Origin: Prasinococcaceae sp. CCMP 1430
Lineage: Eukaryota; Plantae; Prasinodermophyta
Length of the DNA: 64,000 nt
Direction: 5' to 3'
Assembly: GCA_013416795.1 (NCBI GenBank)
Contig: RQSC01001262.1
Span: 1 to 64,000, forward strand
In this document: positions 3,667 to 49,146 of the stretch, one piece after another
Numbering within the stretch: position 1 is the stretch's first letter
Layout of the letters: the number at the start of each line of letters is the position of its first letter
Notes under the pieces: generated by a model
The model's input: the letters and a program-made list of their open reading frames with translations, nothing else
What the model was told of the DNA's origin: nothing
Database searches by the model: none
Position numbers and translations under genes: made by a program

Positions 3667-3716
3667 GTTGGTTGGTTGGTTGGTTGGTTGGTTGGTTGGT
3701 TGGTTTGGTTGGTTGG
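3667..3716 (+). repeat. (GGTT)n microsatellite
   Basis: About 12 tandem units read directly. Confidence 0.9.
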
Positions 3717-6537: not shown

Positions 6538-6893
6538 GTGAGAGGGGCGGGCGCGCAGTCGCCGCGTATTGTGGCGCTGCGTGCATGTGCTGCGATAAAG
6601 ATATGCGGTGCCGACTTCTTGCCTCTTGCGCAGGCCGCGCAGCTCTTTAGCATCGCGCCGCGACTCAGGGCCGTCAGCCGCAGCCGAGTCCGAAACCCCG
6701 CGATGCGCCGGCGTGTAGATCGAGGTGCACTGGTGGATATGAGTGAGGGATCATATAGAATGCGCGGGAAAAATCGTAGCCGCGACGACGCTACGCACAC
6801 CAAATCATGCTGGTATAATTTATCATGTGCCCCAGTTCCTCGGGCACAGCACGTCCGATCGGCGTGCGCGGCCGAGGGATGCCCACTCTACGC

Positions 6894-8266: not shown

Positions 8267-8479
8267 GACGAGGCGTGCGCGTCGGCCGGTGCGCGACGCA
8301 GTGCCAGTCCCCCCGTCCTGTGCTACCGCGCGGAGATCGATACGCGCACGCGCACGTGCCGAGCCGCTGGCGCGGGGTCCCGGCGGTCAGTCGCCGCGTG
8401 CGTGTCGCGCAGTTGAGGGGGGCGGCGCGGGCAACCTTCATAGATAGGGTTAACCGGGTTTATAGAGGAAGTCTCCTGT

Positions 8480-8552
8480 GGTGGGTATAGCTCAGTGGTT
8501 AGAGCGTCTGTTTGTGGTATAGAAAGCGCGGGTTCGATTCCCGCTATCCGCC
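8480..8552 (+). tRNA. trnH: tRNA-His(GUG)
   Basis: Cloverleaf, loop ttGTGgt, G-1 present. Confidence 0.9.
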
Positions 8553-8565
8553 CTTCCTTCAAGGT

Positions 8566-8636
8566 GGTCGTGTGGTCCAGGGGTAAGACAGGAGCCTGCA
8601 AAGCTCTTAACGGCGGTTCGACTCCGCCCACGGCCT
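8566..8636 (+). tRNA. trnC: tRNA-Cys(GCA)
   Basis: Cloverleaf, loop ctGCAaa. Confidence 0.9.
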
Positions 8637-8839
8637 TTCTTTCGATCACCCAAACCCTCTTTCAGAAAATCCTGGTGGTCGAGAGAAAGGGTCTTCTAAA
8701 AAAAAAACATACTTGACCGCCTTTTCGGAAGCCCTTTTTTCTTGGAAAAGGTTTTTGTTTTTTCTTTCTGACAAGGAAACCCTTCGTCTGACCAACAAAG
8801 AAAATCCTTCATCTTTGTTTTTCCTTTGTTTTTTTGTTT

Positions 8840-9469
8840 ATGCCATCTACTCTTCCAATCGCTGGATTCGACCGACTTCTTTCAAAACTTTCTCCTAAGG
8901 CAGCCCAAGAACTTGCGGGTGGACCTGGTCTTACCCTTGCCTATGCTCTTCCAACCTCAGTGGACGGAATCCTTCTTCAGGATACCCACCTTCAGATTCA
9001 CCTTCGACCAAGTCAGTTGAAGGTTGTTCTTCGGTACCTTCGAGATGAGGAAAGTCTTCAGTACACAACGTTGACTGCGATAAACGTGGTTGATCGACCA
9101 ACTGCAGCCCTCCGGTTTGGTGTGGTCTACCAACTCCTTTCCTATACCTTGGAACACCGCCTTCAAGTGATCTGTCTTGTGAATGACCATGAGTCTCTTC
9201 CGAGTGTGGTTGATTTGTATCCGAGTGCCCAATGGTCCGAGTGTGAGAACTGGGATATGTTTGGAATCCATACCTTGGATCACCCAAACCTGTATCGCCT
9301 TCTCACAGACTATGGGTTTGAGGGCCATCCCTTGCGAAAGGATTACCCTCTCTCTGGGTTTACTGAGGTTCGATACGACGAAGACCTTCAACAAGTTGTG
9401 AGCACTCCTGTCGAACTCGCTCAGGAATATCGAGTCTTTGATTATGCTTCTCCTTGGAAAACCTTTTGA
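8840..9469 (+). CDS. nad9: NADH dehydrogenase subunit 9, copy 1
   Basis: WSECENWDMFGI and RLLTDYGFEGHPLRKDYPLSG motifs. Confidence 0.95.
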   Translation: MPSTLPIAGFDRLLSKLSPKAAQELAGGPGLTLAYALPTSVDGILLQDTHLQIHLRPSQLKVVLRYLRDEESLQYTTLTAINVVDRPTAALRFGVVYQLLSYTLEHRLQVICLVNDHESLPSVVDLYPSAQWSECENWDMFGIHTLDHPNLYRLLTDYGFEGHPLRKDYPLSGFTEVRYDEDLQQVVSTPVELAQEYRVFDYASPWKTF

Positions 9470-9622
9470 AAGAGAGAACCCTTCCTGAAAACAACCTTCT
9501 CAAAAAGAATTCTTGTATGGTTTTTTCCAAAAAAAAGACACATACTTGAAAATACGCGAAAGGATAGATATACTTGACTGTATGGGAAAGGATGAACATA
9601 CTTGAGAATAAGCGAAAGGGGT

Positions 9623-9711
9623 GGAAAAGTGGCTGAGTGGACGATAGCGCTGGTTTGCTAAATCAGTATACCGAGTCTTCGGTATCATGGGTTCGAATCC
9701 CATCTTTTCCG
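9623..9711 (+). tRNA. trnS: tRNA-Ser(GCU)
   Basis: Cloverleaf with long variable arm, loop ttGCTaa. Confidence 0.9.
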
Positions 9712-9738
9712 GCACCCTTTCTCTTTGACAGAGAAGGC

Positions 9739-9811
9739 GGGGGTATAACTCAGTTGGTAGAGTGTTTGCTTTGCACGCAAGAAGCCATCGGTTCGAATCC
9801 GGTTATCTCCA
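9739..9811 (+). tRNA. trnA: tRNA-Ala(UGC)
   Basis: Cloverleaf, loop ttTGCac. Confidence 0.9.
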
Positions 9812-9909
9812 CTTTGGTTTCTCGGAACCGAAGGGTTTGTTTCTGAGAGACTTTTTTCAACCAAGACCTTCTTTCTCAGGGTGTACACAGGTGAGCGTCT
9901 GCGAAAAAG

Positions 9910-9981
9910 GCCCTTATGGCTCAGTGGTAGAGCGCACCCATGGTAAGGGTGAGGCCCCGAGTTCGATCCTCGGTAAGGGCT
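9910..9981 (+). tRNA. trnT: tRNA-Thr(GGU)
   Basis: Cloverleaf, stem caccc/gggtg, loop atGGTaa. Confidence 0.85.
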
Positions 9982-10141
9982 CCCCCTTCTTGAAATCTTT
10001 TCTTGGGTTCAAAGGTGGATCAAAAAAGTCTTTTCTTTTAAAGACAGGGTGACTGACCTTTTCTTTGGTTTCTAAGAACCGAAAAAGACACAGACTTGAG
10101 GGTCTGCGCGAAGGATGGACATACTTGAGCGTCTGCGAAAA

Positions 10142-10214
10142 GGGTGCTTAGCTCAGTTGGTAGAGTGTGTCCCTTACAAGGATACTGTCAGCGGTTCGAG
10201 TCCGTTAGCACCTA
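10142..10214 (+). tRNA. trnV: tRNA-Val(UAC)
   Basis: Cloverleaf, loop ctTACaa. Confidence 0.9.
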
Positions 10215-10384
10215 CAAAAAACCTTCTTTCTCGGGAAAAAAGAAAAAAGACAGATTTTTGACCCTCTGGGAAAGGATGGGTATACTTGAGGGTCTGCGAG
10301 AAGGGTATCCATCCTTGAGCGTTTGCGAGAAGGGAAGAAGGTGAAAGAGTCTTCCCTTTTGTTTTTTCCTCTCTCCTTTTTTTT

Positions 10385-10775
10385 CATCTTTTTTATGGAT
10401 TTTGGTTCTGTTTTTGTTCTTCTCTTGATTGCCGCTGTTCTTGCCCTTGCTATTCTTGCTGCCTCCCTTCTTGTGGGTCAACCTCGACGAGCAGACATTG
10501 ATACCGAAGCTGCCTATGAGTGTGGGTTCGAGCCCTTTGATGATGCTCGAGGCCGGTTTGATATTAAGTTTTACTTGGTCGCCATTCTTTTCATTATCTT
10601 TGATTTGGAGGTTTCCTTCCTTTTCCCTTGGGCTCTTTCTCTCAGTCACACAGGAATCTTTGGGTTTTATGTGATGATGGTCTTTCTCGGTGTGCTGACC
10701 GTGGGATTCGTCTACGAGTGGACCAAAGGTGCCCTTGATTGGTGAAGATTCTTTTTCCTTTCTTTTTTTGCTCGG
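10385..10775. repeat. inverted repeat arm A2, 391 bp, pairs with 25175-25565
   Basis: Ends aligned by hand, same offset (sum 35950) as arm A1. Confidence 0.95.
10395..10745 (+). CDS. nad3: NADH dehydrogenase subunit 3, copy 1
   Basis: [37 protein letters not shown]. Confidence 0.95.
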
Positions 10776-25090: not shown

Positions 25091-25204
25091 TCAAAAAGAT
25101 TGCAAACGCAAAAAAAAAGCTGGAAAACTCTCAAAGAAAGAGAAAAAAAATCTTACAGAAAAAAGAAGGAAAAACCGAGCAAAAAAAGAAAGGAAAAAGA
25201 ATCT

Positions 25205-25555
25205 TCACCAATCAAGGGCACCTTTGGTCCACTCGTAGACGAATCCCACGGTCAGCACACCGAGAAAGACCATCATCACATAAAACCCAAAGATTCCTGT
25301 GTGACTGAGAGAAAGAGCCCAAGGGAAAAGGAAGGAAACCTCCAAATCAAAGATAATGAAAAGAATGGCGACCAAGTAAAACTTAATATCAAACCGGCCT
25401 CGAGCATCATCAAAGGGCTCGAACCCACACTCATAGGCAGCTTCGGTATCAATGTCTGCTCGTCGAGGTTGACCCACAAGAAGGGAGGCAGCAAGAATAG
25501 CAAGGGCAAGAACAGCGGCAATCAAGAGAAGAACAAAAACAGAACCAAAATCCAT
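25205..25555 (-). CDS. nad3: NADH dehydrogenase subunit 3, copy 2 (inverted repeat)
   Basis: Translation identical to copy 1. Confidence 0.95.
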
Positions 25556-25565
25556 AAAAAAGATG

Positions 25566-26465
25566 TTTTTTTTCCTCTCTCCTTTTTTGTTTTCCCTTCT
25601 GAGAAAGTGGAAGAAGGGAAGAGCGTTTGCGAGTTCCTACCTATGGGAAGAGCGTCTGGGAGTTCATATGGGTAGGAAAGGGTCTCCCAGTTTTTAGACA
25701 GAAAAAAGAAAAAAGGGCTCTTTCTTCCAAAAAACATCCACGATTGCCTGAGCTTGGCGACTGTCATAGGAACATTCCCTGTGTGAGATGGTTGACTCGA
25801 TTCGTGGGAAAAGCGTCTGCGAGTTCATACAGGTAGGAAGCGCGTCTGGGAGTTCAGACACAGAAAAAGCCAAGAATCTTTGGTTTCTTTTCCAGTCAGT
25901 GGGACAGAAATTTTCTTTTCTGAAAAAACTAGGTGGAAACTTGGGTTCTTTTCTAAAGTTCTTCCCCCTCGGGAATGGCTCCTAGCTTGAGCCCCGGAGT
26001 GGGAATGGTACCCACGCGAGATGGTGACTCGGTATTCCCGGAAAAAGCGTCTGCGAGTGGACACATGTGGGACTCTTTCTTCCAGAACCAACTTTTTTCA
26101 GAGAGTCTTTGTTTGGGAAGCCAAGGCTCTTTGGTTTCACCTCTATTGGCCTAAGCTTGGCTACCGAAGAACGCACGTTTCGTTTGTGAGATGGTTGACT
26201 CAATATGGGGGCGGAAGAGACAGTTTCTCTTTCCCACGGCCTTTTCTACCCTAAGCTTGGGTACTATGGCTTCTGAGCCATATGACTAAATCGTTTGGTC
26301 GCGATAGCAGGTGAGTCGGTGAAAAGGTGGGGAAAGCGAATAAGAGTTCATACAAGTAGGAAAGGGTATGTCAGTTCATATAGATAGGAAAGCGCATAAA
26401 AGTTCATACACAGAAAAAAAACCTTTTTTGGTATGTTCTTAAGAAAAACTCTTCCAACAAAAGTC
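25566..26465. repeat. 900-nt mirror repeat: reverse, non-complemented copy of 9485-10384
   Basis: Reading 26465 down to 25566 on the + strand without complementing reproduces 9485-10384 (both ends and several internal blocks checked by hand). Confidence 0.95.
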
Positions 26466-26480
26466 GAAGGGTTCTCTCTT

Positions 26481-27110
26481 TCAAAAGGTTTTCCAAGGAG
26501 AAGCATAATCAAAGACTCGATATTCCTGAGCGAGTTCGACAGGAGTGCTCACAACTTGTTGAAGGTCTTCGTCGTATCGAACCTCAGTAAACCCAGAGAG
26601 AGGGTAATCCTTTCGCAAGGGATGGCCCTCAAACCCATAGTCTGTGAGAAGGCGATACAGGTTTGGGTGATCCAAGGTATGGATTCCAAACATATCCCAG
26701 TTCTCACACTCGGACCATTGGGCACTCGGATACAAATCAACCACACTCGGAAGAGACTCATGGTCATTCACAAGACAGATCACTTGAAGGCGGTGTTCCA
26801 AGGTATAGGAAAGGAGTTGGTAGACCACACCAAACCGGAGGGCTGCAGTTGGTCGATCAACCACGTTTATCGCAGTCAACGTTGTGTACTGAAGACTTTC
26901 CTCATCTCGAAGGTACCGAAGAACAACCTTCAACTGACTTGGTCGAAGGTGAATCTGAAGGTGGGTATCCTGAAGAAGGATTCCGTCCACTGAGGTTGGA
27001 AGAGCATAGGCAAGGGTAAGACCAGGTCCACCCGCAAGTTCTTGGGCTGCCTTAGGAGAAAGTTTTGAAAGAAGTCGGTCGAATCCAGCGATTGGAAGAG
27101 TAGATGGCAT
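26481..27110 (-). CDS. nad9: NADH dehydrogenase subunit 9, copy 2 (inverted repeat)
   Basis: Translation identical to copy 1. Confidence 0.95.
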   Translation of the reverse strand: MPSTLPIAGFDRLLSKLSPKAAQELAGGPGLTLAYALPTSVDGILLQDTHLQIHLRPSQLKVVLRYLRDEESLQYTTLTAINVVDRPTAALRFGVVYQLLSYTLEHRLQVICLVNDHESLPSVVDLYPSAQWSECENWDMFGIHTLDHPNLYRLLTDYGFEGHPLRKDYPLSGFTEVRYDEDLQQVVSTPVELAQEYRVFDYASPWKTF

Positions 27111-27313
27111 AAACAAAAAAACAAAGGAAAAACAAAGATGAAGGATTTTCTTTGTTGGTCAGACGAAGGGTTTCCTTGTCAGAAAGAAAAAACAAAAACC
27201 TTTTCCAAGAAAAAAGGGCTTCCGAAAAGGCGGTCAAGTATGTTTTTTTTTTAGAAGACCCTTTCTCTCGACCACCAGGATTTTCTGAAAGAGGGTTTGG
27301 GTGATCGAAAGAA

Positions 27314-27384
27314 AGGCCGTGGGCGGAGTCGAACCGCCGTTAAGAGCTTTGCAGGCTCCTGTCTTACCCCTGGACCACACGACC
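27314..27384 (-). tRNA. trnC: tRNA-Cys(GCA), copy 2
   Basis: Reverse complement of 8566-8636. Confidence 0.9.
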
Positions 27385-27397
27385 ACCTTGAAGGAAG

Positions 27398-27470
27398 GGC
27401 GGATAGCGGGAATCGAACCCGCGCTTTCTATACCACAAACAGACGCTCTAACCACTGAGCTATACCCACC
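27398..27470 (-). tRNA. trnH: tRNA-His(GUG), copy 2
   Basis: Reverse complement of 8480-8552. Confidence 0.9.
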
Positions 27471-27616
27471 ACAGGAGACTTCCTCTATAAACCCGGTTAA
27501 CCCTATCTATGAAGGTTGCCCAGCGACCGCCCTTTGGGAAAGGATACACATACTTGAGTATACAGGAAACCCTTTCTTTGATTTTTTTCCATTTGAAGCA
27601 GAAGAAAATCAAAGAC

Positions 27617-27688
27617 TGGAGTATAGCCAAGTGGTAAGGCATCGGTTTTTGGTACCGACATGCGAAGGTTCGATCCCTTCTACTCCAG
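27617..27688 (+). tRNA. trnQ: tRNA-Gln(UUG)
   Basis: Cloverleaf, loop ttTTGgt. Confidence 0.9.
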
Positions 27689-27731
27689 TTTCTTTCCAGA
27701 AAGGATACTTCAGATATCTTCTCTTCGATCT

Positions 27732-28118
27732 ATGCCCTCTCTTCGTCAACTTTTGAAGACTGCTCCTCGAATGAAAGCCGAGAAAAAGTCTACCGTTCCA
27801 GCCTTTGAAGGGTCTCCCTTTCGGAAAGGAATCTGTCTGAAGGTGTACGTGATCAAACCAAAGAAACCAAACTCGGCCCAACGAAAGATCACCAAGGTAA
27901 AACTTTCCACAGGAAAGACTGTGTTGGCCTATATTCCAGGGATCTTTCATACCCTTCAGGAACACTCCCACGTTCTTCTTCGAGGGGGTCGAGTCAAGGA
28001 CCTTCCAGGAGTGAAATACCATTGCGTCCGAGCAAAGGAAGACTTTCTTCCTGTCTTTGAACGGCGGAAAGGACGGTCGAAGTATGGGTGTCCCCACCCA
28101 AAGAATTATCGGAAATGA
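27732..28118 (+). CDS. rps12: ribosomal protein S12
   Basis: [10 protein letters not shown]; [13 protein letters not shown]. Confidence 0.97.
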
Positions 28119-28139
28119 GGGTCCTTCTTTATCTGAAAG

Positions 28140-28239
28140 ATGGAGGGCTTTCTTTGTCTGTCATAGGCAAAGGGTTTTCTTTCTTTGTCATAAAGGAAGG
28201 GTTTCTCGCAAGGTTCAGTCTTTCTCTTGCACACACACG
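28140..28239 (+). ncRNA. 3' fragment of trans-spliced group I intron at rnl site 2500; left border approximate
   Basis: Ends in omega-G (28239) immediately before exon 3. Confidence 0.7.
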
Positions 28240-28650
28240 CGATGTCGTCTCCCTGTGTCCTCGTGCTGCAGAAGGTGCGAAGGGTTCGGCTGTTCGCCGA
28301 TTAATACAGGACGCGGATGGGTTTAGAACGTCGTAAGACAGTTTGGTTTCTACCTACCGTGAGGGTACACCCTGGACTCAGACTGAGTCCAGACGTATAT
28401 GTGAGAAGCTTTCACTCTAGTACGAGAGGACCGAGTGGAACGGACCTCTGGGGTGTCTGTTGTAGTCCCACTGCAAGGCAGAGAATCTACGTCCGGAAAG
28501 GAGAAGGGCTGAGTGCGTCTGAAGCCCGAAACCAGCTTTGACACGACATATCAGCGCTGGCGGAAGACCACCGCAGAATAGGCAAACCGTGTGTCTCGGG
28601 TACACCGAAAAGCGAGTTTGTACTAAGAAGGCTCTCTACGAGTTTTTAAC
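28240..28650 (+). rRNA. rnl: LSU rRNA exon 3 (3'-terminal part, from E. coli-equivalent 2501)
   Basis: cgatgtcg...ggctgttcgcc...gggtttagaacgtcg; ctagtacgagaggacc sarcin-ricin loop; 3' end approximate. Confidence 0.92.
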
Positions 28651-28962
28651 CCTAAGCAAAAATGTATCTTTTCTTTTTCTTTCTTCCTTTCTCACTCTCT
28701 TTTCCCAGGAAAAAAAAAGTCTCTCTATCTTTCAAAAAAAGAAGAAAAAAAGAGATCTCTTGGGATGATCTTTCCATTCTTTTCATGATTTATGTCAACC
28801 TTTGTGAAACTTTCAGGAACACGGAACAAAACAACCCTTCTTCCTGCGTCTACCGCACCCCTTTCAATGGCCCCTTTGTGGGATGCACCCATCCAAGACA
28901 CAGAAGCCTTTGGAAAAGGAGCCTTCGGACCGATGACTGAAAACCACCGACCGACTCCTTTC

Positions 28963-30120
28963 ATGCGTCGATCAGCCTTGATCACTCAACCAGTCTTGAG
29001 TGTGGTGAATGATCACGTGAGTGATTACCCGACCCCTTCGAATTTGACCTATATGTGGGGATTCGGATCTCTTGCAGGAATCTGCCTTGGGATCCAAATT
29101 GCAAGTGGAATCTTCCTTGCAATGCATTATACTCCCCACGTGGACCTTGCCTTTTCGAGCGTTGAGCATATTATGCGAGATGTTGAAGGAGGGTGGTTCC
29201 TCCGGTATCTTCACGCAAATGGAGCCGGAATGTTTTTCATCGTCGTCTATATTCATATTCTTCGAGGACTCTATTATGGGTCTTACACAAGTCCACGAGA
29301 ACTCGTGTGGGTTCTTGGGGTTGTCCTCCTTCTTTTGATGATTTTGACAGCCTTTATTGGGTATGTCTTGCCTTGGGGGCAGATGTCTCTGTGGGGAGCA
29401 ACGGTGATTACCAGCCTTGCATCCGTTATTCCAATTGTAGGAAATGACGTTGTTGTCTGGCTGTGGGGAGGGTTTTCCGTGGATAACGCAACCTTGAACC
29501 GATTCTTTAGCCTTCACTACCTTCTTCCCTTTGTGATTGCTGGACTTTCTATCCTTCACATTGCAGCCCTTCACCAGTATGGGTCAAACAACCCTGTGGG
29601 AGTTCCCTCACACACAGACAAGCATCCTTTGTACCCTCTTTTCTATGTGAAAGACCTTGTGGCCTGGTTGGTCTTTGCAATTATTTTCTCTTGCTTTGTC
29701 CATTATGCACCCAACTATTTGGGGCATGCGGATAACTACATTCCAGCAAACCCTTTGAGTACCCCTGCACACATTGTTCCAGAGTTCTACGTCCTTCCTT
29801 TTTACGCTGTTCTTCGGTCTATTCCAGACAAACTTCTTGGGGTTGTGGCAATGATTGCAACCTTTGTCTGCCTCGGACTCATGCCTTGGCTTCATACAGC
29901 ATCTGTTCGATCAAACGCCTTCCGACCATTGGCAGCAATGGCGTACTGGTCCTTTGTGGCCACCGCCCTTCTTCTTGGATGGATTGGTGCGATGCCTGTC
30001 GAGTCCCCCTACCTTGAAATCGGTCAAATTTTGACCTTTTACTTCTTTTTCTACTTCCTTGTGCTGACCCCGGTCCTTGGACGCCTTGAAAACCTCCTTC
30101 TTCGATGGAAGGTTCAATGA
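28963..30120 (+). CDS. cob: apocytochrome b; in-frame upstream ATG also at 28792
   Basis: [28 protein letters not shown]. Confidence 0.98.
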
Positions 30121-30129
30121 AAAAGAAAG

Positions 30130-30419
30130 GTAGTAGATATATTTTTTATTTATCCTTCAAAGGAAAAGACAGGGAAAAAAGTCTTTTTTTTGAAAGGATG
30201 TTTTTTCTGTGTGCGTTCGTCTTTGGGTCGACGACCGTTTTTCTTTTTCAAGAAAAGAAAGACTCTCTCTTCTCTCTTTGTGTGTGGGTCACCCCACTTC
30301 AAAGAAAGGAAGGCGTTGAGTCGTTGAGGAAAGACCACTCTTTCCTGCGGATTGTTCGTTCTGAAGGTTCCCGCATTCTGCCTTCATCAAAGAAGGTTTC
30401 TTCTTTGCCCCGATGTGTG
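30130..30419 (-). ncRNA. 5' fragment with complete catalytic core of group I intron at rnl site 2500; far border approximate
   Basis: P aatgcgggaacc (30366-30377), Q aatccgcagg (30344-30353), R ctcaacgactc (30318-30328), S aagagagagtct (30260-30271); P3 gaaggc/gccttc. Confidence 0.85.
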
Positions 30420-30641
30420 AGGTGCCAAACACTTCCGTCGATTCGAGCTCTCGGGAAGTATAAGCCTGTTATCCCCGGGGTACCTTTGATCCGTTGAGCG
30501 AAGCCCCTTCCACAAGGAAACTCCGGTTCAGTATGATCGACTTTCGTCTCTGCTCGATGTGCCCATCTTACAGTCAAGCAGGCATAGGGCATTCTCCCCA
30601 CTCGCCCGGTTGCCGTCCGGGGTGAGCCTACCTTGCATACA

Positions 30642-30681
<40 letters not shown>

Positions 30682-30972
30682 CTCCACCATGCACTGTCCA
30701 CAGGGTGAGAGCGCCGGTGTGTGTGGGTAGTCTCTCACTGATGCGTGTCCTCTAGGCCGCAACCTATGGATACCGCTCCTACCTAGTCTGCGCACACAGG
30801 TCCCGACACTCAATGCAGGGCTTGAGTAAAGGTCCACGGGGTCTTCTCGCCTTACCGTGAGTACCCCGCATCTTCACGGGGACTTCAATTTCACCGAGTC
30901 CATGGTTGAGACAGCTGGCCGGTGGTGACGTGATTCATGCGGGTCGCTACTTATGCGACAAGGAATTTCGCT
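30420..30972 (-). rRNA. rnl: LSU rRNA exon 2 (E. coli-equivalent 1932-2500)
   Basis: Starts agcgaaattccttgtc; ends ggggataacaggct...gtttggcacct. Confidence 0.93.
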
Positions 30973-31140
30973 CGTTGAATGGACGCGCTTTTCCATCTGA
31001 AATCTCGACAGTTTTTCCACCGAAAGACTGTCCTCCTTCATTTTCTAAAGGGGCCAATTCCATAAAGGCGGTCTCAAAAAAAAACCGCCCTTGAAAACGG
31101 ATTTTTCTTGAGAAATCCTTGAGCACACACCCTTTCGCTG
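30973..31140 (-). ncRNA. 3' fragment of group I intron at rnl site 1931 (P8 3' strand, S, P9 hairpins, omega-G)
   Basis: S-like aaggaggacagtct (31025-31038), hairpin atgga/tccat, omega-G at 30973. Confidence 0.7.
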
Positions 31141-31687
31141 AAGCTCAGGTATATTCATCCTTTCCCGTACGGTCAACCATGTCTATCCTTTCCCATAGGG
31201 TCAAGTCTATGTCTTTTTTTCCATATGCTCAAGTATGGACCTCCTTTCTTAAATAAAAAATTTTATCTCTAAGGGGTCAGAAAAGTCTGACCAAAGACTT
31301 GAGTCTCTTTTTTCTGTGGTGTGTATGATTCAAAAAAAAAAACCTTTCCTTTATGACAAACACATGTTTTCTCGCTCGCAAACAAGGGAAACCAGACCGG
31401 AGAACCCAAAGAAGGAAAGAAGCATCCGCCCCCTCCAAGAAAGCGGTCACTCAAAAGAAGAAAAAACCTCCTGAACCCTCTTCTTCTTTGGTTTTAATAA
31501 GAGTACTATAAAAAACCTGCTGTCTTTCGTTAGCATGTATGATGGAAGACTGAAGGTTTAAGGTTTTCAGTCTTTTTTTTCTTTCAAAGACTCTTGTGTT
31601 TTTTTTACGAATCCTTGAAGATTCAAACAAAACCATTTTGCTTTCTCATTCCGAGTGGAGGGTGGTTTTTTCCCTCTCTTTCTGGTC

Positions 31688-33120
31688 ATCTTCCAAGGGC
31701 AGGTTCCCCTACCCTTACCTTGTTACGACTTCACTTCAGTTACTTTTGACAGGGTGGGACAGAGTTCTTTTCTTCCTCGAAAAGAGAAAAAGAAGGATGT
31801 CTGTACTTCACCTGAGAAAAATTTCCAAAGTGTGACGGGCGGTGTGTACAAGGTCCAGGTACGTGTTCACCGCGGCATTCTGATCCGCGATTACTCGCAA
31901 TTCCTCCTTCACGAGGGCGAGTTGCAGCCCCCGATCCGAACTAAGGAAGCCTTTGAGGGTTCTCTCAAGGTTTCCCTTTCGATCACCTATTGAAGCTTCC
32001 ATTGTAGCACAGGTGCAGCCCAACCCATAACGACCATAAGGACTTGACGTCATCCGCGCCTTCCTCCCCCTTCTCGAGGGCAGTCTTTTCAGTCAGAAAG
32101 AATCTGAAAAGGCGGGTTTCGCTCGTTTCTGAAATGAATCATAGGACACAAATCACGAACTGACGACAGCCATGCAGTACGCCTCATCACCAGAACTGGT
32201 GTGATGGAAGGGTTGGTAAGGTTTTGCGCGTATCATCGCATTAAGCCCCATGCTCCACTGCTTGTGTGGACCCCCGTCAATTCCTTTGAGTTTCAGCGCT
32301 GCCGCCGTACTCCCCAGGCGGTGCTCTCCGGCGTACACCTTGATCCCTAAGAATTTTTCAACCCTTAGATGGAGCACAACGTTTTCAGCTGTGGACTACG
32401 AGGGTCTCTAATCCTCTTCGCTCCCCACGCTTTCGTGCGTCAGCGTCGGTGCTGGGCCAGAAAACAGCCTTCGCCCATTGGCCTTCGACTCGAGATCACT
32501 GCATTGCACCGCTTCCTCGAGCCTTCCGTTTTCCTCTCCCAGACCCATGAGTGTGCCTTTCACCGAGCCTTTCCTCGATTCTTCCAGGGCTTTAACCCGA
32601 TGAGTGCACCTCCGCCTAGACACCCTTCACGCCCAGTCATTCCGATGAACACTCGCCCCCTTCGTATTACCGCGGCTGCTGGCACGAAGTTTGCCGGGGC
32701 TTCTCTTTTTTTCCTTCATCATAGGAGAAAGTCTTGAAGTTTACAACAGTGCGCTGTCAACCTCCTTCACGCGGTGTCGCTGCATCAGGGTTTCCCCCAG
32801 TGTGCAAGATTCTTCACTGCTGCCCTGATTTCAGGTCTGAGCCCTTTTCAGTTCCAGTGTGGCTGATCATACTCTCATACCAGCGACGGATCATCGGCTA
32901 GGATGGGCACAAACCACCTACGACCTAATCCGAAACAGGACCCTCCAAAGGCGGATGCTTCCTTTCCAAACATTCGGGGGACTCTCTCCCTTGGTTTTTC
33001 CTTTGGGTAGTCTTCCTGTCTATTACTCACCCGGACGCCCTGAGCATTGCCCAGTCGACTTGCATGTGTTAGACGCACCGCCAGCGTTCCATCTGGGCCA
33101 GGATCAAACCCGTCCTTTCA
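31688..33120 (-). rRNA. rns: SSU rRNA, ends approximate
   Basis: gtttgatcctggc, gtgccagcagccgcggtaatac, gaattgacgggg, gtacacaccgcccgtca, aagtcgtaacaaggta. Confidence 0.97.
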
Positions 33121-33124
33121 CGAA

Positions 33125-33299
33125 TAGTTCTTTTTTCTGGTTTTTTCTCTTTTCTCCTGTGGTCGGAGAAGAAAGAAAGATTCAGAGTGGACCACATAGA
33201 GTCTCTGAGGATCCTACTAGACCTTAAAGGGTCGTTGGTGTCCTGCGGGTGAAGATTCTTTCCCGCATAGAGTGGTCTGTTCGAAGGCAGCTTTGGTGT
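33125..33299 (-). ncRNA. 5' fragment of group I intron at rnl site 1931 (P1 to P8 5' strand)
   Basis: IGS gctgcctt; P tatgcgggaaa; Q cccgcagg; R cctcagagactc (33198-33210); P3 gaccac (33272-33277) pairs gtggtc (33190-33195). Confidence 0.85.
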
Positions 33300-35150
33300 A
33301 CCTTAGTACTGTCAGTGATACAGCAGCCATTGGCCCGGTTTTCGATTTCCGGCAAACACCGGTCCTGTACAACGACGGGCATTGGGCACACGTCAGTCCC
33401 TATACGTCGTCTTTCGACTTTGCAGAGACCTGTGGTTTTAATAACCAGTCCCCGGCCACATTTTTCTGCGACTCCAGTCAGACTGGAGCCCTCCTTCTTG
33501 CGAACGTACGGAGTGAATTTGCCGAGTTCCTTAACCATGGGTCTCTCGACGCCTGAGTCTGTTCGACCCGCGCACCAGTGTCGGTTTAGGTACGGATACA
33601 GGGTTTTTGAACTTTTCCTGGACCTTCTTTTCTCAGACCTTTCTTCCCAAAGAAAAAACCTCAAAGAAAGAAAGCCGTCCTTCAAAAACATCCTCCATCA
33701 AAGTGAGACTTCTCTCATCTTCTTAGGATCCGTGTCTTCCACAGATGGTCAACAGTGCTGTGGAACCCGTGCGCATACGGCGACGGGGATTGGCTCCCCG
33801 AGCCTCGTTACTCATGTCAGCATGCTCACTCCCGAGTCCTCCAGAAAAAGTATCCTTTTTCCTTCAAAGGAACACAGGACGCTCCGCTACCAGAACGAAT
33901 CGTTCTCCGTCGTTTCGGTGGTGCCCTTCAGTCCCGAGTATGGTCGGCGCCAAAAAACTCATTCAGTGCGCTGGTACGCGATCATCATAGAACGGCTGCT
34001 TCCAAGCCCATCTCCTGAATGTCTCTGTTTTCTGACTTCCTTGCGCACTCAGGGCACACTTTGGGACCTTAACGGACGGTCTGGGCTCTTCCCCTCTCGA
34101 CCCTGGACCTTCGCGCCCAGAGTCTGTACAGATACCCACCCTTTGTCGGCCTTCGGAGTTTTCTTGGACTTCGTAAAGGTTTGGGCTCCCGTCATCCAAC
34201 AAGTGCTCTACCTCCGAAAAGGAGTCTGGGTCTAGTCTACCTACATAGATTTCGCGGAGAACCAGCTATCACCAGGCTTGGTAAGCCTTTCACTCCTTTC
34301 CACCCCTCATCCGAGAATTTTGCCACATTCACCGGTTCGGTCCTCCATCGAAAGACTTTCGACTTCAACCTGGAGATGGAAAGCTCGCCTGGCTTCGGGT
34401 CGTACACCCCCTATACACAGAAAAGAAAGAAAAAACCCTTATCGCATACGCTCAAGAGAAAATCCTTTCTTTGAAAACCAAGAAAGAAGCCTTTGTAAAC
34501 TCGGGTTTCCTCCTGCCTCCACCTTTGGGCTCAAGCCTTGGTTTTTTTTTGTACAGGTGAATCTACACTCGCTGACCCATTATGCAAAAGGTACGCCGTC
34601 ACCATGTCTGGCTCCGACCGTTTGATGTGCACCAGGATTCAGGTTCTTTTCAAGTCCTCATTCTTCGGAAGAAGTCTTCCGGATCGGTTCTTTTCACCCT
34701 TCCCTCACGGTACATCCTGCGCTATCGGTTCTTCTAGGTATCCAACCTTCAGAGGGTGGTCCCCCTGTCTTCCATCGGTGTGATCCGATGTACTCATTCT
34801 TTTCTCTGTCGACCCAGTCTTTCCTGTACAGGGCTTTCACCTTCTTTGGCCCGGGATTCCACCACGGTTCAAGAAAAGAAGAAGGTCGACCTTCTTTGGG
34901 GTTTTTCACCAAAAAAAGAGAGGTTTGGTCCGGGGTCGATCACATCTACTGCCGGAGTCTCGGTTGATCAGTCTTCCTCGGGGTACTGAGATGTTTCACT
35001 TCCCCCGGTGTTTGTTCTGTCTGAGCTTGTGCTCTTGGGAAATCAAAACTTTGTCGCGGTGTGCTAAAGTTTTGCCTTTCGTTTTGGTGTACGTCCCTTT
35101 CCTAGAAGACCAGGGCATCCCCCTGGTGCATCCTCTCTCTCTACGATTCC
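33300..35150 (-). rRNA. rnl: LSU rRNA exon 1 (5' part to E. coli-equivalent 1931); 5' end approximate
   Basis: ggatgccctgg, gaaacatctcagtacc, taatgggtcagcgagt, aaggaactcggcaa; ends ctaaggt. Confidence 0.93.
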
Positions 35151-35169
35151 ACGAATACTTTTTCAGCGG

Positions 35170-35242
35170 TAGCAGCGGTGGGGATCGAACCCACGGCCCT
35201 AGGAGTATGAATCCTATGCTCGTACCACTGAGCTACACTGCC
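35170..35242 (-). tRNA. trnM: tRNA with CAU anticodon (elongator Met, or Ile if lysidinylated)
   Basis: Cloverleaf, stem tagga/tccta, loop ttCATac. Confidence 0.85.
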
Positions 35243-35252
35243 AAAGTGGAAA

Positions 35253-35358
35253 GCCCTCCATCGCGGTCCCAGTCTTCCGGTACAGCGAACCTTCAGAAAA
35301 AGACGGGTCGAAAAAGGATCGTGTAGGTTTTTCTGAATGCACTGACTTCCCTAGAGGC
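35253..35358 (-). rRNA. rrn5: probable 5S rRNA
   Basis: acacgatcctttttcgacc resembles the loop C motif of plant mt 5S rRNA; terminal stem possible; length about 106 nt. Confidence 0.55.
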
Positions 35359-35499
35359 GGTCTATGAAGATCTTTCTTTTGTTTTTCTGTCTGCGACCGG
35401 TTTAATGGTGACACTTTGTCCGGTCTCTTGAAAGGATTCTTTCTCTTTCGCTTTTTTCTTTAAAAAAGTCCGGTTTTGATGCTCATCCTGTACACACTT

Positions 35500-36255
35500 A
35501 TGGTTTTCAGTCCTTTGGAACAGTTCGCCATCATTCGACTTCTCACCCTTCGGGTTGGAGGGCTCGATCTTTCCATCACAAACTCCTTCCTCATGACCGT
35601 TTTGGGGTTGAGTCTGCTTTTGGGTGCCTATGTTTACACCCTTCAAGGAACAGGAGGAAAGCTTGTTCCGACCTACACCCAGGTCTGTGTGGAGTCTCAG
35701 TATACCTTTATCAAAGGGTTGGTTGGAGACCAACTTGGAAAGGAAGGGTATCCCTACCTTTCTCTTATCTATGTGGTCTTTACCTTGATTCTGGGATGTA
35801 ACCTTATCGGAATGGTTCCCTATTCCTTTACACCGACCTCCCACTTTATCTTTACCCTTGGATTGTCCCTTTCCCTCTTTATTGGGCTTGTGATTATTGG
35901 GTTCTCACGCCATGGGCTTCACTTCTTTAGCCTCCTTCTTCCTGCAGGAACCCCTCTTGGACTTGCACCCTTCCTTGTTCTTCTTGAACTGATTTCCTAT
36001 GTCTTTAAGGTGATCAGTCTTGGGGTTCGACTCGCAGCAAACATGCTTGCGGGACACTGTCTTTTGAAGATTCTTGCTGGGTTTGTATGGACTATGGTTC
36101 TGAGTGGGTCACCTTTGCTTATGCTTGCGGGAAGTCTTCCCTTTGGAGCCATTGTTATCTTGACCGGAGTGGAATTCGGAATTGCAGGGATTCAGGCATA
36201 CGTGTTTACTATGCTTTTCTGTATCTACCTTCAAGAGGCTTTGAACCTTCACTGA
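35500..36255 (+). CDS. atp6: ATP synthase subunit 6
   Basis: SPLEQF; NLIGMVPYSFTPTSH; SLGVRLAANMLAGH; IQAYVF. Confidence 0.97.
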   Translation: MVFSPLEQFAIIRLLTLRVGGLDLSITNSFLMTVLGLSLLLGAYVYTLQGTGGKLVPTYTQVCVESQYTFIKGLVGDQLGKEGYPYLSLIYVVFTLILGCNLIGMVPYSFTPTSHFIFTLGLSLSLFIGLVIIGFSRHGLHFFSLLLPAGTPLGLAPFLVLLELISYVFKVISLGVRLAANMLAGHCLLKILAGFVWTMVLSGSPLLMLAGSLPFGAIVILTGVEFGIAGIQAYVFTMLFCIYLQEALNLH

Positions 36256-36264
36256 GGATAGAAC

Positions 36265-36337
36265 GCGCCTATAGCTCAATGGATAGGGCGTCGCACTTCG
36301 GATGCGAAGATTGAGGGTTCGAGTCCTTCTAGGCGTA
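36265..36337 (+). tRNA. trnR: tRNA-Arg(UCG)
   Basis: Cloverleaf, stem tcgca/tgcga, loop ctTCGga. Confidence 0.88.
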
Positions 36338-36392
36338 GACTCCTTTCCTTTTCCCAGACCCTCAAGTGTGTGCACCCTTTTCCCAGCCTTTG

Positions 36393-36465
36393 GAGCCTGT
36401 AGCTCAGTCGGGAGAGCGCACCCTTGATAAGGGTGAGGTCCGTTGTTCGAACCAACGTAGGCTCA
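36393..36465 (+). tRNA. trnI: tRNA-Ile(GAU)
   Basis: Cloverleaf, loop ttGATaa. Confidence 0.9.
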
Positions 36466-36470
36466 GATTT

Positions 36471-36542
36471 GGAAGGATAGTTTCAATGGTAAAATGGCGG
36501 TCTCCAAAACCGGCGTTGGGGGTTCGAGCCCCTCTCCTTCTG
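36471..36542 (+). tRNA. trnW: tRNA-Trp(CCA)
   Basis: Cloverleaf, loop ctCCAaa; consistent with UGA used as stop. Confidence 0.88.
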
Positions 36543-36587
36543 AAGAAGGTTCTCAGAAAGAAACCCGTCATCTGACCGAGAAAGAAG

Positions 36588-36659
36588 GCTCCCTTCGTCT
36601 AGGGGTAAGGACATAACCTTTTCGAGGTTGAAACACGGGTTCGAATCCCGTAGGGAGCA
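36588..36659 (+). tRNA. trnE: tRNA-Glu(UUC)
   Basis: Cloverleaf, loop ttTTCga. Confidence 0.88.
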
Positions 36660-36793
36660 GGAAAGAAAGGAAGTCTTTCTTTTTTCAGACTCTTTTTTCT
36701 GAAAAACTCAGTCTTTTTTCTTGTGTTTCCCTTTCTTTTTCTTTTGTACAGAAAGAAAGCTTCCACCAGTCTCCTTTTTCTTTCTTTGACTGA

Positions 36794-37786
36794 ATGACAC
36801 TTCTTACCTTTGTCTTCCAACTTACCCAGATTCTTGGTCTTCTTCTTCCTTTGTTGATTGCGGTTGCCTACCTTACCCTTGCAGAGCGAAAGATTATGGG
36901 GGCCATGCAACGACGAAAGGGGCCGGATGTGGTTGGTCTCTGGGGGCTTTTCCAGCCCCTTGCGGATGCTTTGAAGCTTCTTGTGAAAGAGGCTGCCCTT
37001 CCTACCCTTTCAGATATTCACCTTTTTGTTGCCGCCCCAGTCCTTACCTTTATTTTTGCAATGATGGGGTGGGCTGCTCTTCCTCTTTCAGAGGATGCTG
37101 TTCTTGTGGACCTTGATCTTGGAATTTTGTATATTTTTGCAACAGGGTCTTTGGGGGTGTATGGAATCATTATTGCAGGGTGGGCATCGAACTCAAAGTA
37201 TGCCTTTCTTGGAGCCCTCCGATCGACCGCACAGATGGTTTCCTATGAGGTTTCTATTGGACTTATTTTGATTTCCGTCCTTCTCTGTACAGGGTCTCTT
37301 CAAATTGCTTCTATTGTGAAAGCCCAGGAGGAAGTCTGGCTTGTCCTCCCTCTCTTCCCTATTGCTCTTCTTTTCTTCATTTCTTGTCTTGCGGAAACGA
37401 ATCGAGCACCCTTTGACCTTCCAGAAGCGGAGGCGGAGTTGGTTGCAGGGTACAACGTTGAATACGGGTCTATGGGGTTTGCCCTCTTCTTTCTTGGAGA
37501 GTATGCAAACATGATTCTCATGTCTGCCCTTCTTGTCCTTCTCTTCCTTGGTGGGTGGCACCCTCCTCTTATGGTCTTTCCTTTGACCATGATTCCTGGA
37601 GGGTTCTGGTATGCAGTCAAAACCCTCTTCCTTCTTCTTGGGTATATTTGGGTTCGAGCCAGTCTTCCTCGATACCGATATGACCAACTTATGGCCCTTG
37701 GGTGGAAGGTCTTCCTCCCTCTTTCCCTTGGATGGGTCTGTATGTTGAGTGGTCTTCTTCTTGGATTGAACGCTCTTCCAATGTAA
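36794..37786 (+). CDS. nad1: NADH dehydrogenase subunit 1, copy 1
   Basis: [14 protein letters not shown]; [26 protein letters not shown]. Confidence 0.98.
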
Positions 37787-37872
37787 ACCTTTCTTTTCCC
37801 ATATGGTCAAATATGTGTCTTTTTTCCCATACGGTCAAAGAAAGAGAGGGTTTCTTTCAAAGACTGAGACAC

Positions 37873-37945
37873 GGCAGCATGGGCCAATTGGAAGGCTGCG
37901 AGGCTCATGACCTCGAGTGTCCTGGTTCGAATCCAGGTGCTGCTC
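37873..37945 (+). tRNA. trnM: tRNA-Met(CAU), copy 1, possibly initiator
   Basis: Cloverleaf, loop ctCATga. Confidence 0.85.
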
Positions 37946-37980
37946 TCACCTTCACCCTAGACCACCCACAGATTTTTTGT

Positions 37981-46255: not shown

Positions 46256-46344
46256 AGTGAAAAAAAAAATGGTCTCCAAACCATGGTTGGTTTGATTGTG
46301 TGCCACCCTCCAAAAAATCTGTGGGTGGTCTAGGGTGAAGGTGA

Positions 46345-46417
46345 GAGCAGCACCTGGATTCGAACCAGGACACTCGAGGTCATGAGCCTCGCAGCCTTCC
46401 AATTGGCCCATGCTGCC
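46345..46417 (-). tRNA. trnM: tRNA-Met(CAU), copy 2
   Basis: Reverse complement of 37873-37945. Confidence 0.85.
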
Positions 46418-46503
46418 GTGTCTCAGTCTTTGAAAGAAACCCTCTCTTTCTTTGACCGTATGGGAAAAAAGACACATATTTGACCATATGGGAAAAGAAA
46501 GGT

Positions 46504-47496
46504 TTACATTGGAAGAGCGTTCAATCCAAGAAGAAGACCACTCAACATACAGACCCATCCAAGGGAAAGAGGGAGGAAGACCTTCCACCCAAGGGCCATA
46601 AGTTGGTCATATCGGTATCGAGGAAGACTGGCTCGAACCCAAATATACCCAAGAAGAAGGAAGAGGGTTTTGACTGCATACCAGAACCCTCCAGGAATCA
46701 TGGTCAAAGGAAAGACCATAAGAGGAGGGTGCCACCCACCAAGGAAGAGAAGGACAAGAAGGGCAGACATGAGAATCATGTTTGCATACTCTCCAAGAAA
46801 GAAGAGGGCAAACCCCATAGACCCGTATTCAACGTTGTACCCTGCAACCAACTCCGCCTCCGCTTCTGGAAGGTCAAAGGGTGCTCGATTCGTTTCCGCA
46901 AGACAAGAAATGAAGAAAAGAAGAGCAATAGGGAAGAGAGGGAGGACAAGCCAGACTTCCTCCTGGGCTTTCACAATAGAAGCAATTTGAAGAGACCCTG
47001 TACAGAGAAGGACGGAAATCAAAATAAGTCCAATAGAAACCTCATAGGAAACCATCTGTGCGGTCGATCGGAGGGCTCCAAGAAAGGCATACTTTGAGTT
47101 CGATGCCCACCCTGCAATAATGATTCCATACACCCCCAAAGACCCTGTTGCAAAAATATACAAAATTCCAAGATCAAGGTCCACAAGAACAGCATCCTCT
47201 GAAAGAGGAAGAGCAGCCCACCCCATCATTGCAAAAATAAAGGTAAGGACTGGGGCGGCAACAAAAAGGTGAATATCTGAAAGGGTAGGAAGGGCAGCCT
47301 CTTTCACAAGAAGCTTCAAAGCATCCGCAAGGGGCTGGAAAAGCCCCCAGAGACCAACCACATCCGGCCCCTTTCGTCGTTGCATGGCCCCCATAATCTT
47401 TCGCTCTGCAAGGGTAAGGTAGGCAACCGCAATCAACAAAGGAAGAAGAAGACCAAGAATCTGGGTAAGTTGGAAGACAAAGGTAAGAAGTGTCAT
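46504..47496 (-). CDS. nad1: NADH dehydrogenase subunit 1, copy 2
   Basis: Translation identical to copy 1. Confidence 0.97.
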
Positions 47497-47643
47497 TCAG
47501 TCAAAGAAAGAAAAAGGAGACTGGTGGAAGCTTTCTTTCTGTACAAAAGAAAAAGAAAGGGAAACACAAGAAAAAAGACTGAGTTTTTCAGAAAAAAGAG
47601 TCTGAAAAAAGAAAGACTTCCTTTCTTTCCTGCTCCCTACGGG

Positions 47644-47862
47644 ATCAATAAACCATCGCTTGTTTGTGAAAATATAAAAAGTCCGAACACTCTGACTTCG
47701 AGTAAGGGCTGCCAGTGCCATCTTTCGAAGGGGACCAAGGTGTACAAGGTAGGCCAAGGTTGCGCCAAGGGTGGTTGCAATCAAAGGTGCAACCTTCGCT
47801 GAAAGCGGAACAAGCTCAGCCTCGAACCCTTGGGTCAGCCCTCCAGCAGCAACCAGAGACCC
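47644..47862 (-). pseudogene. nad5: 219-bp internal nad5 fragment, direct repeat of 44552-44770
   Basis: Aligned by hand at constant offset 3092. Confidence 0.92.
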
Positions 47863-48220
47863 CCCCCGCTGCTCTCAGGCCCGCCCCGCGCCACCCGCCA
47901 ACCGTTAGGGTCCAAAATAAAACCCTTAATGAGGTCTTAACCCTAACCCCAACGCCGGGCGGGACCCCCTGCGGCGGCCTTTTTTTTTGCGCGCGTTTTT
48001 CTTCGGTATTTTACGCGGCGAGATTTCGTGAGTTTGCATGTGAATTCGCGGCGTCGTTCCGGAAAAAGGCGGAAAATGCGCGAGGAAAAAACGAGCGGAT
48101 AAGACGGCGCTGCGGCGGGGGTGCCACAGGGGCACGCGCTGCGGGCGGGGTGTGTGGGGGGCGAGGGGGGGGGAGGGAGCGAGGGAGGTGTGAGGGGCGC
48201 CCGCCTTTCGCGCGGTGAGG

Positions 48221-49112: not shown

Positions 49113-49146
<34 letters not shown>

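What the first reader, a model, noticed from the sequence alone, without database searches (positions are those of the whole stretch)
25566..26465. Exact 900-nt mirror copy (reversed but NOT complemented) embedded in register inside an inverted repeat
Seen: 8429-10775 and 25175-27521 are two 2347-bp arms of one inverted repeat (partner = 35950 minus position). The outer parts (1056 and 391 bp) are true reverse complements. The middle 900 nt are not: + strand 26465->25566 read backwards without complementing equals 9485-10384. Example: trnS begins ggaaaagtggctgagtggacgatagcgc at 9623, and 26300-26327 reads cgcgatagcaggtgagtcggtgaaaagg. Every base checked is the complement of what the repeat predicts, switching sharply at 25565/25566 and 26465/26466 with no indel. 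So this arm carries unreadable mirror ghosts of trnS, trnA, trnT and trnV. Established: 5'->3' antiparallel templating cannot make a long mirror copy by inversion, duplication or template switching. Inference: the round length and base-exact register point to an in-silico event (a segment complemented in place by gap filling, editing or deliberate alteration). If it is real in the cell it would imply an undescribed parallel or reverse-direction copying mechanism.
Basis: partly seen in the sequence, partly recalled or inferred. Interest (0 to 1): 0.92.

Follow-up and report, generated by a model that had tools for sequence, protein, structure and literature searches.

The report
In-place complemented block: sequence-handling artefact
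A 900-base stretch of this alga's mitochondrial DNA has every base swapped for its pairing partner without being reversed; no cell process is known to do that and the closest wild relatives lack it, so it is almost certainly a computer error or edit in the sequence file.

Summary
Window 25566-26465 read backwards equals 9485-10384 at 900/900 bases, with 0/900 as a reverse complement. The flanking 1056 and 391 nt are perfect reverse complements.

Complementing the block in place restores trnV, trnT, trnA and trnS on the minus strand. It then lines up end to end with the closest natural relatives.

Fifteen independent marine-metagenome mitochondrial contigs of Prasinoderma-like algae span the nad9-nad3 spacer. 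All carry the ordinary tRNA-bearing sequence. Three of them are 99.6% identical to the window. The block as written matches none of them.

The block is complex DNA, not a simple repeat. Its length is a round number and it has not diverged from its partner by a single base.

My reading is an in-silico event: a routine that complemented, or reversed, without doing both, or a deliberate edit. I put a real mirror copy below 1%.

The scan noted the same kind of block before on other DNA of this genome: blocks of about 52-126 nt inside nuclear genes. I could not test those notes, and I found no such block in this window's nuclear genes.

The "2347-bp repeat" is the cut end of a 12.8-kb mitochondrial inverted repeat, on a contig that joins mitochondrial DNA to nuclear-like DNA.

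The parts
25566..26465 (.). The altered block. It is the exact in-place complement of the expected repeat sequence, which equals 9485-10384 reversed without complementing. It has no detectable gene on either strand.
   Evidence: 900/900 reversed, 0/900 reverse complement. (no tRNA). (no BLAST hit to any related contig as written).
9485..10384 (+). The ordinary partner block in repeat copy A. It is the nad9-nad3 spacer with trnS(gcu) 9622-9713, trnA(ugc) 9739-9812, trnT(ggu) 9909-9984 and trnV(uac) 10142-10215, plus short dispersed repeats.
   Evidence: It matches the related contigs directly at 86-99.6%.
8429..10775 (+). Repeat copy A, proximal 2347 nt only: trnH, trnC, nad9 (8834-9469), the tRNA spacer, and nad3 (ATG at 10395, ORF end 10745). 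It is cut off at about 8420-8429, where GC-rich nuclear-like DNA begins.
25175..27521 (-). The matching 2347 nt of repeat copy B: nad3 25205-25555(-), the altered block, nad9 26481-27116(-), trnC 27314-27384(-) and trnH 27397-27469(-).
25175..37979 (.). Full copy B of the large mitochondrial inverted repeat (12,805 nt): nad3, nad9, trnC, trnH, trnQ, rps12, split rnl pieces, cob, rns, atp6, a tRNA cluster and nad1. Its distal 1335 nt (36645-37979) pair with 46311-47645.
   Evidence: (I1, I2, I3). Related contigs carry trnQ-rps12-cob next to both single-copy borders. The extent of the large repeat is an inference.
46311..47645 (.). Distal 1335 nt of repeat copy A, holding a second nad1 and trnM. 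The middle of copy A, about 9.1 kb, is absent from the contig.

Best explanation
The block is an in-silico artefact in the sequence record, not a feature of the cell's DNA. The true sequence of repeat copy B at 25566-26465 is the ordinary reverse complement of 9485-10384, carrying second copies of trnS, trnA, trnT and trnV on the minus strand. At some step the 900 bases were either complemented without being reversed, or copied from the other repeat arm with reversal but no complementation. The two errors give the same string. Candidate steps are assembly-graph traversal, polishing or gap filling across an inverted repeat, format conversion, and manual or scripted editing. What is shown: the string relation, the restoration of the genes on complementing, and the ordinary state in all natural relatives. 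What is inferred: which step made the error. I cannot tell a bug in the source assembly's pipeline from a deliberate edit made later.
For: (1) The relation is exact: 900/900 reversed and 0/900 reverse complement, with no indel and borders sharp to the base. (2) Complementing in place brings back four tRNA genes in the order and on the strand that the repeat predicts. (3) The closest natural contigs are L013, L014/L019 and L020, at 99.3-100% identity in the flanks. They align to the block at 99.6% only after in-place complementing, and then run straight through both borders. (4) All 15 independent contigs that span the nad9-nad3 spacer (L001-L011, L013-L015, L020) carry the ordinary form, next to cox1 and next to atp8/ymf19 alike. 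They share 306-850 20-mers with the ordinary block and at most 2 with the mirror block, and I did not inspect those two. (5) There is zero divergence between the block and the mirrored partner, although this spacer is the most variable part of the arm among relatives: per 50-nt window, 21-100% of the relatives' bases match the window's inside the spacer against 96-100% in the genes. Repeat-copy correction needs homology and so cannot keep a mirrored copy identical. (6) The length is exactly 900. (7) Established knowledge: all known DNA synthesis is antiparallel. In the complete (telomere-to-telomere) human genome, long mirror repeats come only from simple tandem repeats, and mechanisms that create mirror symmetry as such 'do not seem to exist' (PMC12214015). 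Reverse-without-complement matches are used as a null control for template switching (10.1101/038380). (8) A lead I did not test: other readers of this scan noted many complemented-not-reversed blocks inside essential nuclear genes of the same genome.
Against: No raw reads and no deposited record of this assembly could be reached, so the artefact is inferred from relatives at 99.6% identity, not from the organism itself. I found no second such block in this window. The block sits almost exactly inside the 925-nt intergenic spacer, 15 nt after the nad9 stop and 10 nt before the nad3 start. A randomly placed 900-nt block would do that in about 2% of positions within the arm, so something non-random chose the place, and I cannot name it. 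I found no documented software bug of this kind in the literature searches.
Confidence: 0.96

Rival explanations
1. This is a sub-case of the main explanation. The error comes from the pipeline that built the source assembly and is systematic. The two arms of an inverted repeat are one graph segment walked in both directions, or one arm served as template for the other. One segment, the variable spacer, was then written out for the reverse walk with reversal but without complementing.
For: It explains the perfect register, the 100% identity to the partner and the sharp borders. The block borders lie within 6-12 nt of where variation among strains begins and ends, as a graph bubble would. Other readers report many complemented-not-reversed blocks in this genome, often in repeated or paralogous genes (untested). 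In the other window that covers this stretch, the unaltered partner sits at 901-1800, which hints at fixed-size chunking.
Against: The neighbouring repeat segments (1056 and 391 nt) were written correctly. No such bug is documented in what I could search. No second block turned up in this window's lysyl-tRNA synthetase and dynein genes. Under this reading the round length would be a coincidence.
Confidence: 0.5
2. This is also a sub-case of the main explanation. Someone edited the sequence deliberately or by hand after assembly. Examples are a test alteration or decoy, or a 'complement' command used in a sequence editor in place of 'reverse complement'.
For: The length is exactly 900. The block is the largest multiple of 100 that fits the 925-nt spacer, and it spares both protein genes. 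Its partner sits at the round coordinates 901-1800 in another window of the scan. Reversal without complementing is a standard way to make null sequences (10.1101/038380).
Against: Nothing in the data identifies an editor. The other blocks noted in this genome have irregular lengths (52-126 nt) and cluster in some loci, which looks more like a pipeline fault.
Confidence: 0.45
3. The block is real DNA in the cell: a 900-nt mirror copy made by an unknown parallel-strand or reverse-direction copying process, or by an unknown repair route.
For: Only that the string is present in the window given to me.
Against: No polymerase or recombination route is known to yield a mirror copy of complex sequence (PMC12214015; 10.1101/038380). 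Natural populations 99.6% identical to the window have the ordinary sequence, and their contigs run through the block without the break a mixed population would cause. The block differs from its partner at zero bases in the arm's most variable stretch. The length is a round number.
Confidence: 0.005
4. The block is an ordinary biological rearrangement that was misread. Either it is an inversion of the spacer inside one repeat arm, which would give a direct copy of 9485-10384, or it is a diverged or replaced spacer.
For: Inversions between short dispersed repeats are common in this kind of mitochondrial DNA, and the spacer holds such repeats (families D4 and D5).
Against: An inversion predicts direct identity, and the observed direct identity is 236/900, the random level. 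A replaced spacer predicts no exact relation to the partner, and the observed reversed identity is 900/900.
Confidence: 0.001

Closest known systems
Large inverted repeat of the Prasinoderma coloniale mitochondrial genome (KF387569; PMC3873408)
   Same: The gene set and layout match. nad3, nad9, rps12, cob, the rRNA genes and a split rnl with trans-arranged group I intron pieces all lie in a large inverted repeat, and an rnl piece sits on the opposite strand between rps12 and cob. G+C is about 45%. The cob protein is 94% identical.
   Different: Here the repeat is about 12.8 kb, against 14.4 kb in P. coloniale. One copy is cut and joined to nuclear-like DNA. One copy also carries the 900-nt block, which is the complement, base for base, of the true repeat sequence.
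Mirror repeats and H-DNA motifs
   Same: The same strand reads alike in both directions.
   Different: Natural long mirror repeats are expanded simple tandem repeats, mostly homopurine-homopyrimidine, with adjacent arms (PMC12214015). This block is complex tRNA-bearing sequence. Its partner begins 15,181 nt before it. It is a mirror of a distant copy and is not internally symmetric: its identity to its own mirror image is 236/900.
Reverse-without-complement sequences used as null controls
   Same: The string operation is identical.
   Different: [quoted passage not shown] Here the operation has ended up inside a genome sequence.
Orientation errors in sequence records (complement or reverse applied alone)
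   Same: Sharp borders, no indel, and every base the Watson-Crick partner of the expected one.
   Different: From my own knowledge, such errors usually affect whole records or whole reads. A block inside a contig is unusual, and I found no published description of one.

Membership tests
In-silico complement-without-reverse error | Every base in the block is the Watson-Crick complement of the expected base at the same position, with no indel and with sharp borders | tested here: met
   0/900 reverse-complement identity, 900/900 reversed identity, and flanks 1056/1056 and 391/391.
In-silico complement-without-reverse error | Undoing the operation restores the genes and colinearity with relatives | tested here: met
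   trnV, trnT, trnA and trnS reappear; 99.6% colinear with L013, L014 and L020.
In-silico complement-without-reverse error | The organism's own reads do not support the junctions | not testable with these tools
   The window's assembly and its reads are not in the reachable collections. The longest contigs carrying the window's own proteins are 1.9-35.6 kb metagenome contigs. Exact scans of the JGI metagenomes for the mirror junction and for the normal junction both returned nothing, so that test had no power.
Organelle inverted repeat | The two copies are reverse complements kept identical by copy correction | tested here: met
   Met for 1447 of the 2347 nt here and for the distal 1335 nt. 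Not met inside the block.
Inversion or template-switch product | The new segment is the reverse complement of its template, or a direct copy after inversion inside an inverted repeat | tested here: not met
   direct identity 236/900 and reverse-complement identity 0/900.
Natural mirror repeat (H-DNA type) | Derived from a simple tandem repeat or a homopurine-homopyrimidine tract, with adjacent arms | tested here: not met
   all four bases are near-even (T 255, A 239, G 230, C 176) and there are 638 distinct hexamers. The arms are 15,181 nt apart. The criterion comes from PMC12214015.

The most novel reading that the evidence does not exclude
The mirror block exists in the alga's mitochondrial DNA (or in a nuclear copy of it). 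It would then have been made by an undescribed process that copies a strand in parallel polarity.
Probability: 0.005. Interest if true: 0.98.

Novelty: not a real feature. Interest (0 to 1): 0.06.

Why it matters
The block has no biological meaning. Its practical meaning is data quality. Second copies of four tRNA genes are hidden in this record. If the other readers' notes hold, the same fault breaks essential nuclear genes elsewhere in this genome (tubulin, histones, EFL), and that would corrupt gene models, protein sets and any comparative work built on the assembly. A whole-assembly screen for in-place complemented blocks would be cheap and would say whether the assembly should be corrected or set aside. 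For the scan itself, mirror findings in this genome should be treated as one shared artefact and not as separate discoveries.

Tried and rejected
(1) I scanned the JGI metagenome contigs for an exact 24-mer across the right mirror junction and got 0 hits. The control 24-mer across the normal junction also gave 0 hits, so the test had no power.

(2) I looked up six ORFs lying in or across the block by exact sequence, to see whether a public record contains them. None is in the collection. Two of the four control ORFs (my nad9 and rps3-like translations) were not found either, so this result is uninformative.

(3) I looked for further in-place complemented blocks in this window.
- The mirror self-scan found only this block.
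- The gap in the dynein AAA1 domain between ORFs 59577-63860 and 53765-59113 is two ordinary introns around a normal exon, not a mirrored exon.
- A codon-usage likelihood scan, native against complemented in 18-codon windows, over 4.7k codons of dynein and lysyl-tRNA synthetase gave no clearly negative window. The minimum was -5.9 against window means of +6.5 to +8.0 (SD 4-5), and the lowest windows I recognised translate to ordinary conserved sequence.

(4) An inversion or a replaced spacer is rejected by the identity figures.

(5) I considered a colour-space (SOLiD) decoding error, where one wrong colour complements all later bases. It would also predict blocks with the other two base swaps. 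None is seen in the mitochondrial part: relatives cover 8420-35837 except for the block and the 86-nt variable stretch 10248-10333. I did not pursue it further.

(6) Literature searches for a documented assembler or polisher bug of this kind found nothing relevant.

(7) This is not the published P. coloniale CCMP1413 assembly, which has 22 chromosomes (PMC7455551). This genome has at least 184 pieces, and its cob protein is only 94% identical to KF387569.

Full report
**Observation**

I compared 8429-10775 base by base with the reverse complement of 25175-27521. There are exactly three runs: 1056 matches, 900 mismatches (9485-10384) and 391 matches, with no indel. The two 900-nt blocks are identical at 236 positions when read directly, 900 when one is reversed only, 224 when complemented only, and 0 when reverse-complemented. 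So 25566-26465 is the base-for-base complement of what the repeat predicts.

Because no base equals its own complement, the borders are fixed to the base. The repeat finder reports the two flanks as separate 100% inverted repeats (I2 and I3). The block is complex sequence: near-even base composition, 638 distinct hexamers out of 895, and no internal mirror symmetry. Chance is not an explanation. A mirror scan of the whole window against itself found only this block and echoes of it, apart from one 37-nt self-match at 34498-34534.

**What the region is**

Window 8420-47867 has about 45% G+C. It carries a mitochondrial gene set:
- nad9, nad3, atp8/ymf19, nad4L, sdh3, rps4, tatC, atp9 and ribosomal protein genes;
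- cox1, rps12 and cob;
- a split rnl with a group I intron, and rns;
- atp6, nad1, cox3, cox2 and three Proton_antipo_M genes, including nad5;
- 26 tRNA genes.

The cob protein is 94% identical to that of Prasinoderma coloniale. [quoted passage not shown]

The flanks, 1-8420 and 47868-64000, have 62-70% G+C. They hold nuclear genes: a RING-finger protein, a lysyl-tRNA synthetase, and a dynein heavy chain with ordinary introns. The synthetase gene is 99.57% identical in DNA to a Tara Oceans metagenome scaffold. The organism is therefore a wild marine Prasinoderma-like alga. It is not the 22-chromosome P. coloniale CCMP1413 assembly (PMC7455551; one search shows at least 184 pieces).

**The repeat is larger than described**

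In related contigs, the repeat copy next to atp8/ymf19 and the copy next to cox1 both continue through trnC, trnH, trnQ, rps12 and cob. In the window, a second perfect inverted repeat pairs 36645-37979 with 46311-47645 (I1).

The simplest reading is one large inverted repeat. Copy B is complete at 25175-37979 (12.8 kb). Copy A is present only as its two ends, 8429-10775 and 46311-47645, because the mitochondrial segment on this contig is cut inside copy A and joined to nuclear-like DNA. This reading is an inference from the layout.

**Test against natural relatives**

Exact-protein look-ups with nad3, cob and nad9 returned 20 loci from ENA, Tara and Logan assemblies of marine metagenomes. Fifteen distinct contigs span the nad9-nad3 spacer.
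- As written, the mirror block has no BLAST hit in any of them. Complemented in place, it hits all of them.
- At the 20-mer level, they share 306-850 words with the ordinary block and 0-2 with the mirror block. I did not inspect the two shared words.
- BLAST coverage of the window by the first ten loci is continuous from 8420 to 35837, except for exactly 25566-26465 and an 86-nt variable stretch at 10248-10333.
- The closest contigs are L013 (SRR22824340), L014/L019 (SRR22824283) and L020 (SRR22824326). They are 99.3-100% identical to the window in the flanks. The complemented block aligns to them at 99.6%, contiguously with the flanks: L013 2216-2606, 2607-3506, 3507-7694. L020 matches 2024 nt of arm A at 99.6%.
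- L013 runs from nad4L and atp8/ymf19 (in the single-copy region) through nad3, the spacer, nad9 and rps12 into cob. L014 and L015 start at the repeat border and run through the block to cob.
- Those Logan contigs do not break at the block borders. If a mirror variant co-existed in those populations, I would expect a break there. This last point is an inference.

**Effect of undoing the operation**

With the block complemented in place, ARAGORN finds trnV(uac), trnT(ggu), trnA(ugc) and trnS(gcu) on the minus strand of arm B, in the order the repeat predicts. As written, it finds only trnC and trnH.

**Why this is not biology**

All known replication, repair and recombination pair strands antiparallel. 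Their products are direct or reverse-complement copies.

A study of the complete human genome concludes that long mirror repeats come only from simple tandem repeats. It adds that mechanisms creating mirror symmetry as such do not seem to exist (PMC12214015). Work on template switching uses reverse-without-complement matches as its null control because no biology is known for them (10.1101/038380).

The spacer is also the most variable part of the arm among relatives. Per 50-nt window, agreement of relatives with the window drops to 21-41% at 10250-10349, against 96-100% in nad9 and nad3. Yet the block is identical to its mirrored partner at all 900 bases. Copy correction between repeat arms needs homology and could not maintain that identity.

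**Which in-silico step**

This is not settled. Three oddities stand out.
- The length is exactly 900.
- The block lies almost wholly within the 925-nt spacer, 15 nt past the nad9 stop and 10 nt before the nad3 start. About 2% of possible positions within the arm would do that.
- In another window of this scan that starts 8584 nt later, the unaltered partner sits at 901-1800.

These facts fit a routine working on fixed-size chunks or graph segments. For a reverse-strand match across the inverted repeat, such a routine would flip the order of the bases but not the bases themselves. The same facts also fit a scripted or manual edit.

Other first-stage readers noted many complemented-not-reversed blocks (52, 55, about 56, 66, 74, 87, 95 and about 126 nt) inside nuclear genes on other pieces of this genome. 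The genes include beta-tubulin, EFL, the H2A-H2B pair, EHD, an RCC1 repeat and a SUMO protease. I could not read those pieces, so these notes are leads only. If true, they point to a systematic fault.

In my own window I found no further block, either in the mirror self-scan or in 4.7k codons of dynein and lysyl-tRNA synthetase.

**Limits**

The assembly's own reads and the deposited record could not be reached. ORFs crossing the block are not in the protein collection, but two of my four control ORFs were not either. The exact-pattern scans of the JGI metagenomes returned nothing for the mirror junction and nothing for the normal junction, so they had no power. The verdict therefore rests on the string relation, the restored genes, 15 natural contigs (three at 99.6%), and established enzymology.

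**Verdict**

This is not a real feature: confidence 0.96 for an artefact or edit, about 0.005 for a real mirror copy. Interest is low, except as a warning about this assembly.

Noticed in passing
window 8420-8429 and 47645-47870: A 39.4-kb mitochondrial segment lies between GC-rich nuclear-like flanks with no gap. [quoted passage not shown] At the right end, 47644-47867 is a 224-nt direct copy of 44552-44775 (inside nad5). Telomere-like motifs (TTAGGG, CCCTAA) follow at about 47895-47950. This is either a chimeric contig or a very recent nuclear insertion of mitochondrial DNA.
   Followed up: partly
window 25175-37979 with 8429-10775 and 46311-47645: The two small inverted repeats in the window are best read as the two ends of one 12.8-kb mitochondrial inverted repeat, like the 14.4-kb repeat of P. 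coloniale. The implied genome size is about 48.3 kb.
   Followed up: partly
window 9485-10384 and homologous parts of L001-L020: The nad9-nad3 tRNA spacer is a hot spot of strain variation, with indels and 28-51-nt dispersed repeats (families D4 and D5), while the flanking genes are 96-100% conserved across marine metagenomes. L007 lacks trnV in this spacer.
   Followed up: partly
window 28240-28633 (+), 30239-30881 (-), 33193-35145 (-): The large-subunit rRNA gene is in pieces on both strands, with a group I intron match at 30239-30472. This is as described for the trans-spliced rnl of P. coloniale (PMC3873408). Other readers of the scan have already noted it.
   Followed up: no
window 51163-63860 (-): A dynein heavy chain gene, of which all but the N-terminal end lies in the window, appears intact. 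That is of some note for an alga described as non-flagellate. The AAA1 domain is split by two introns at about 59113-59577.
   Followed up: partly
another window of this genome (starts at 8585 of this window): In that window the unaltered partner of the block occupies exactly 901-1800. This is a second round-number coincidence, and I could not explain it.
   Followed up: no
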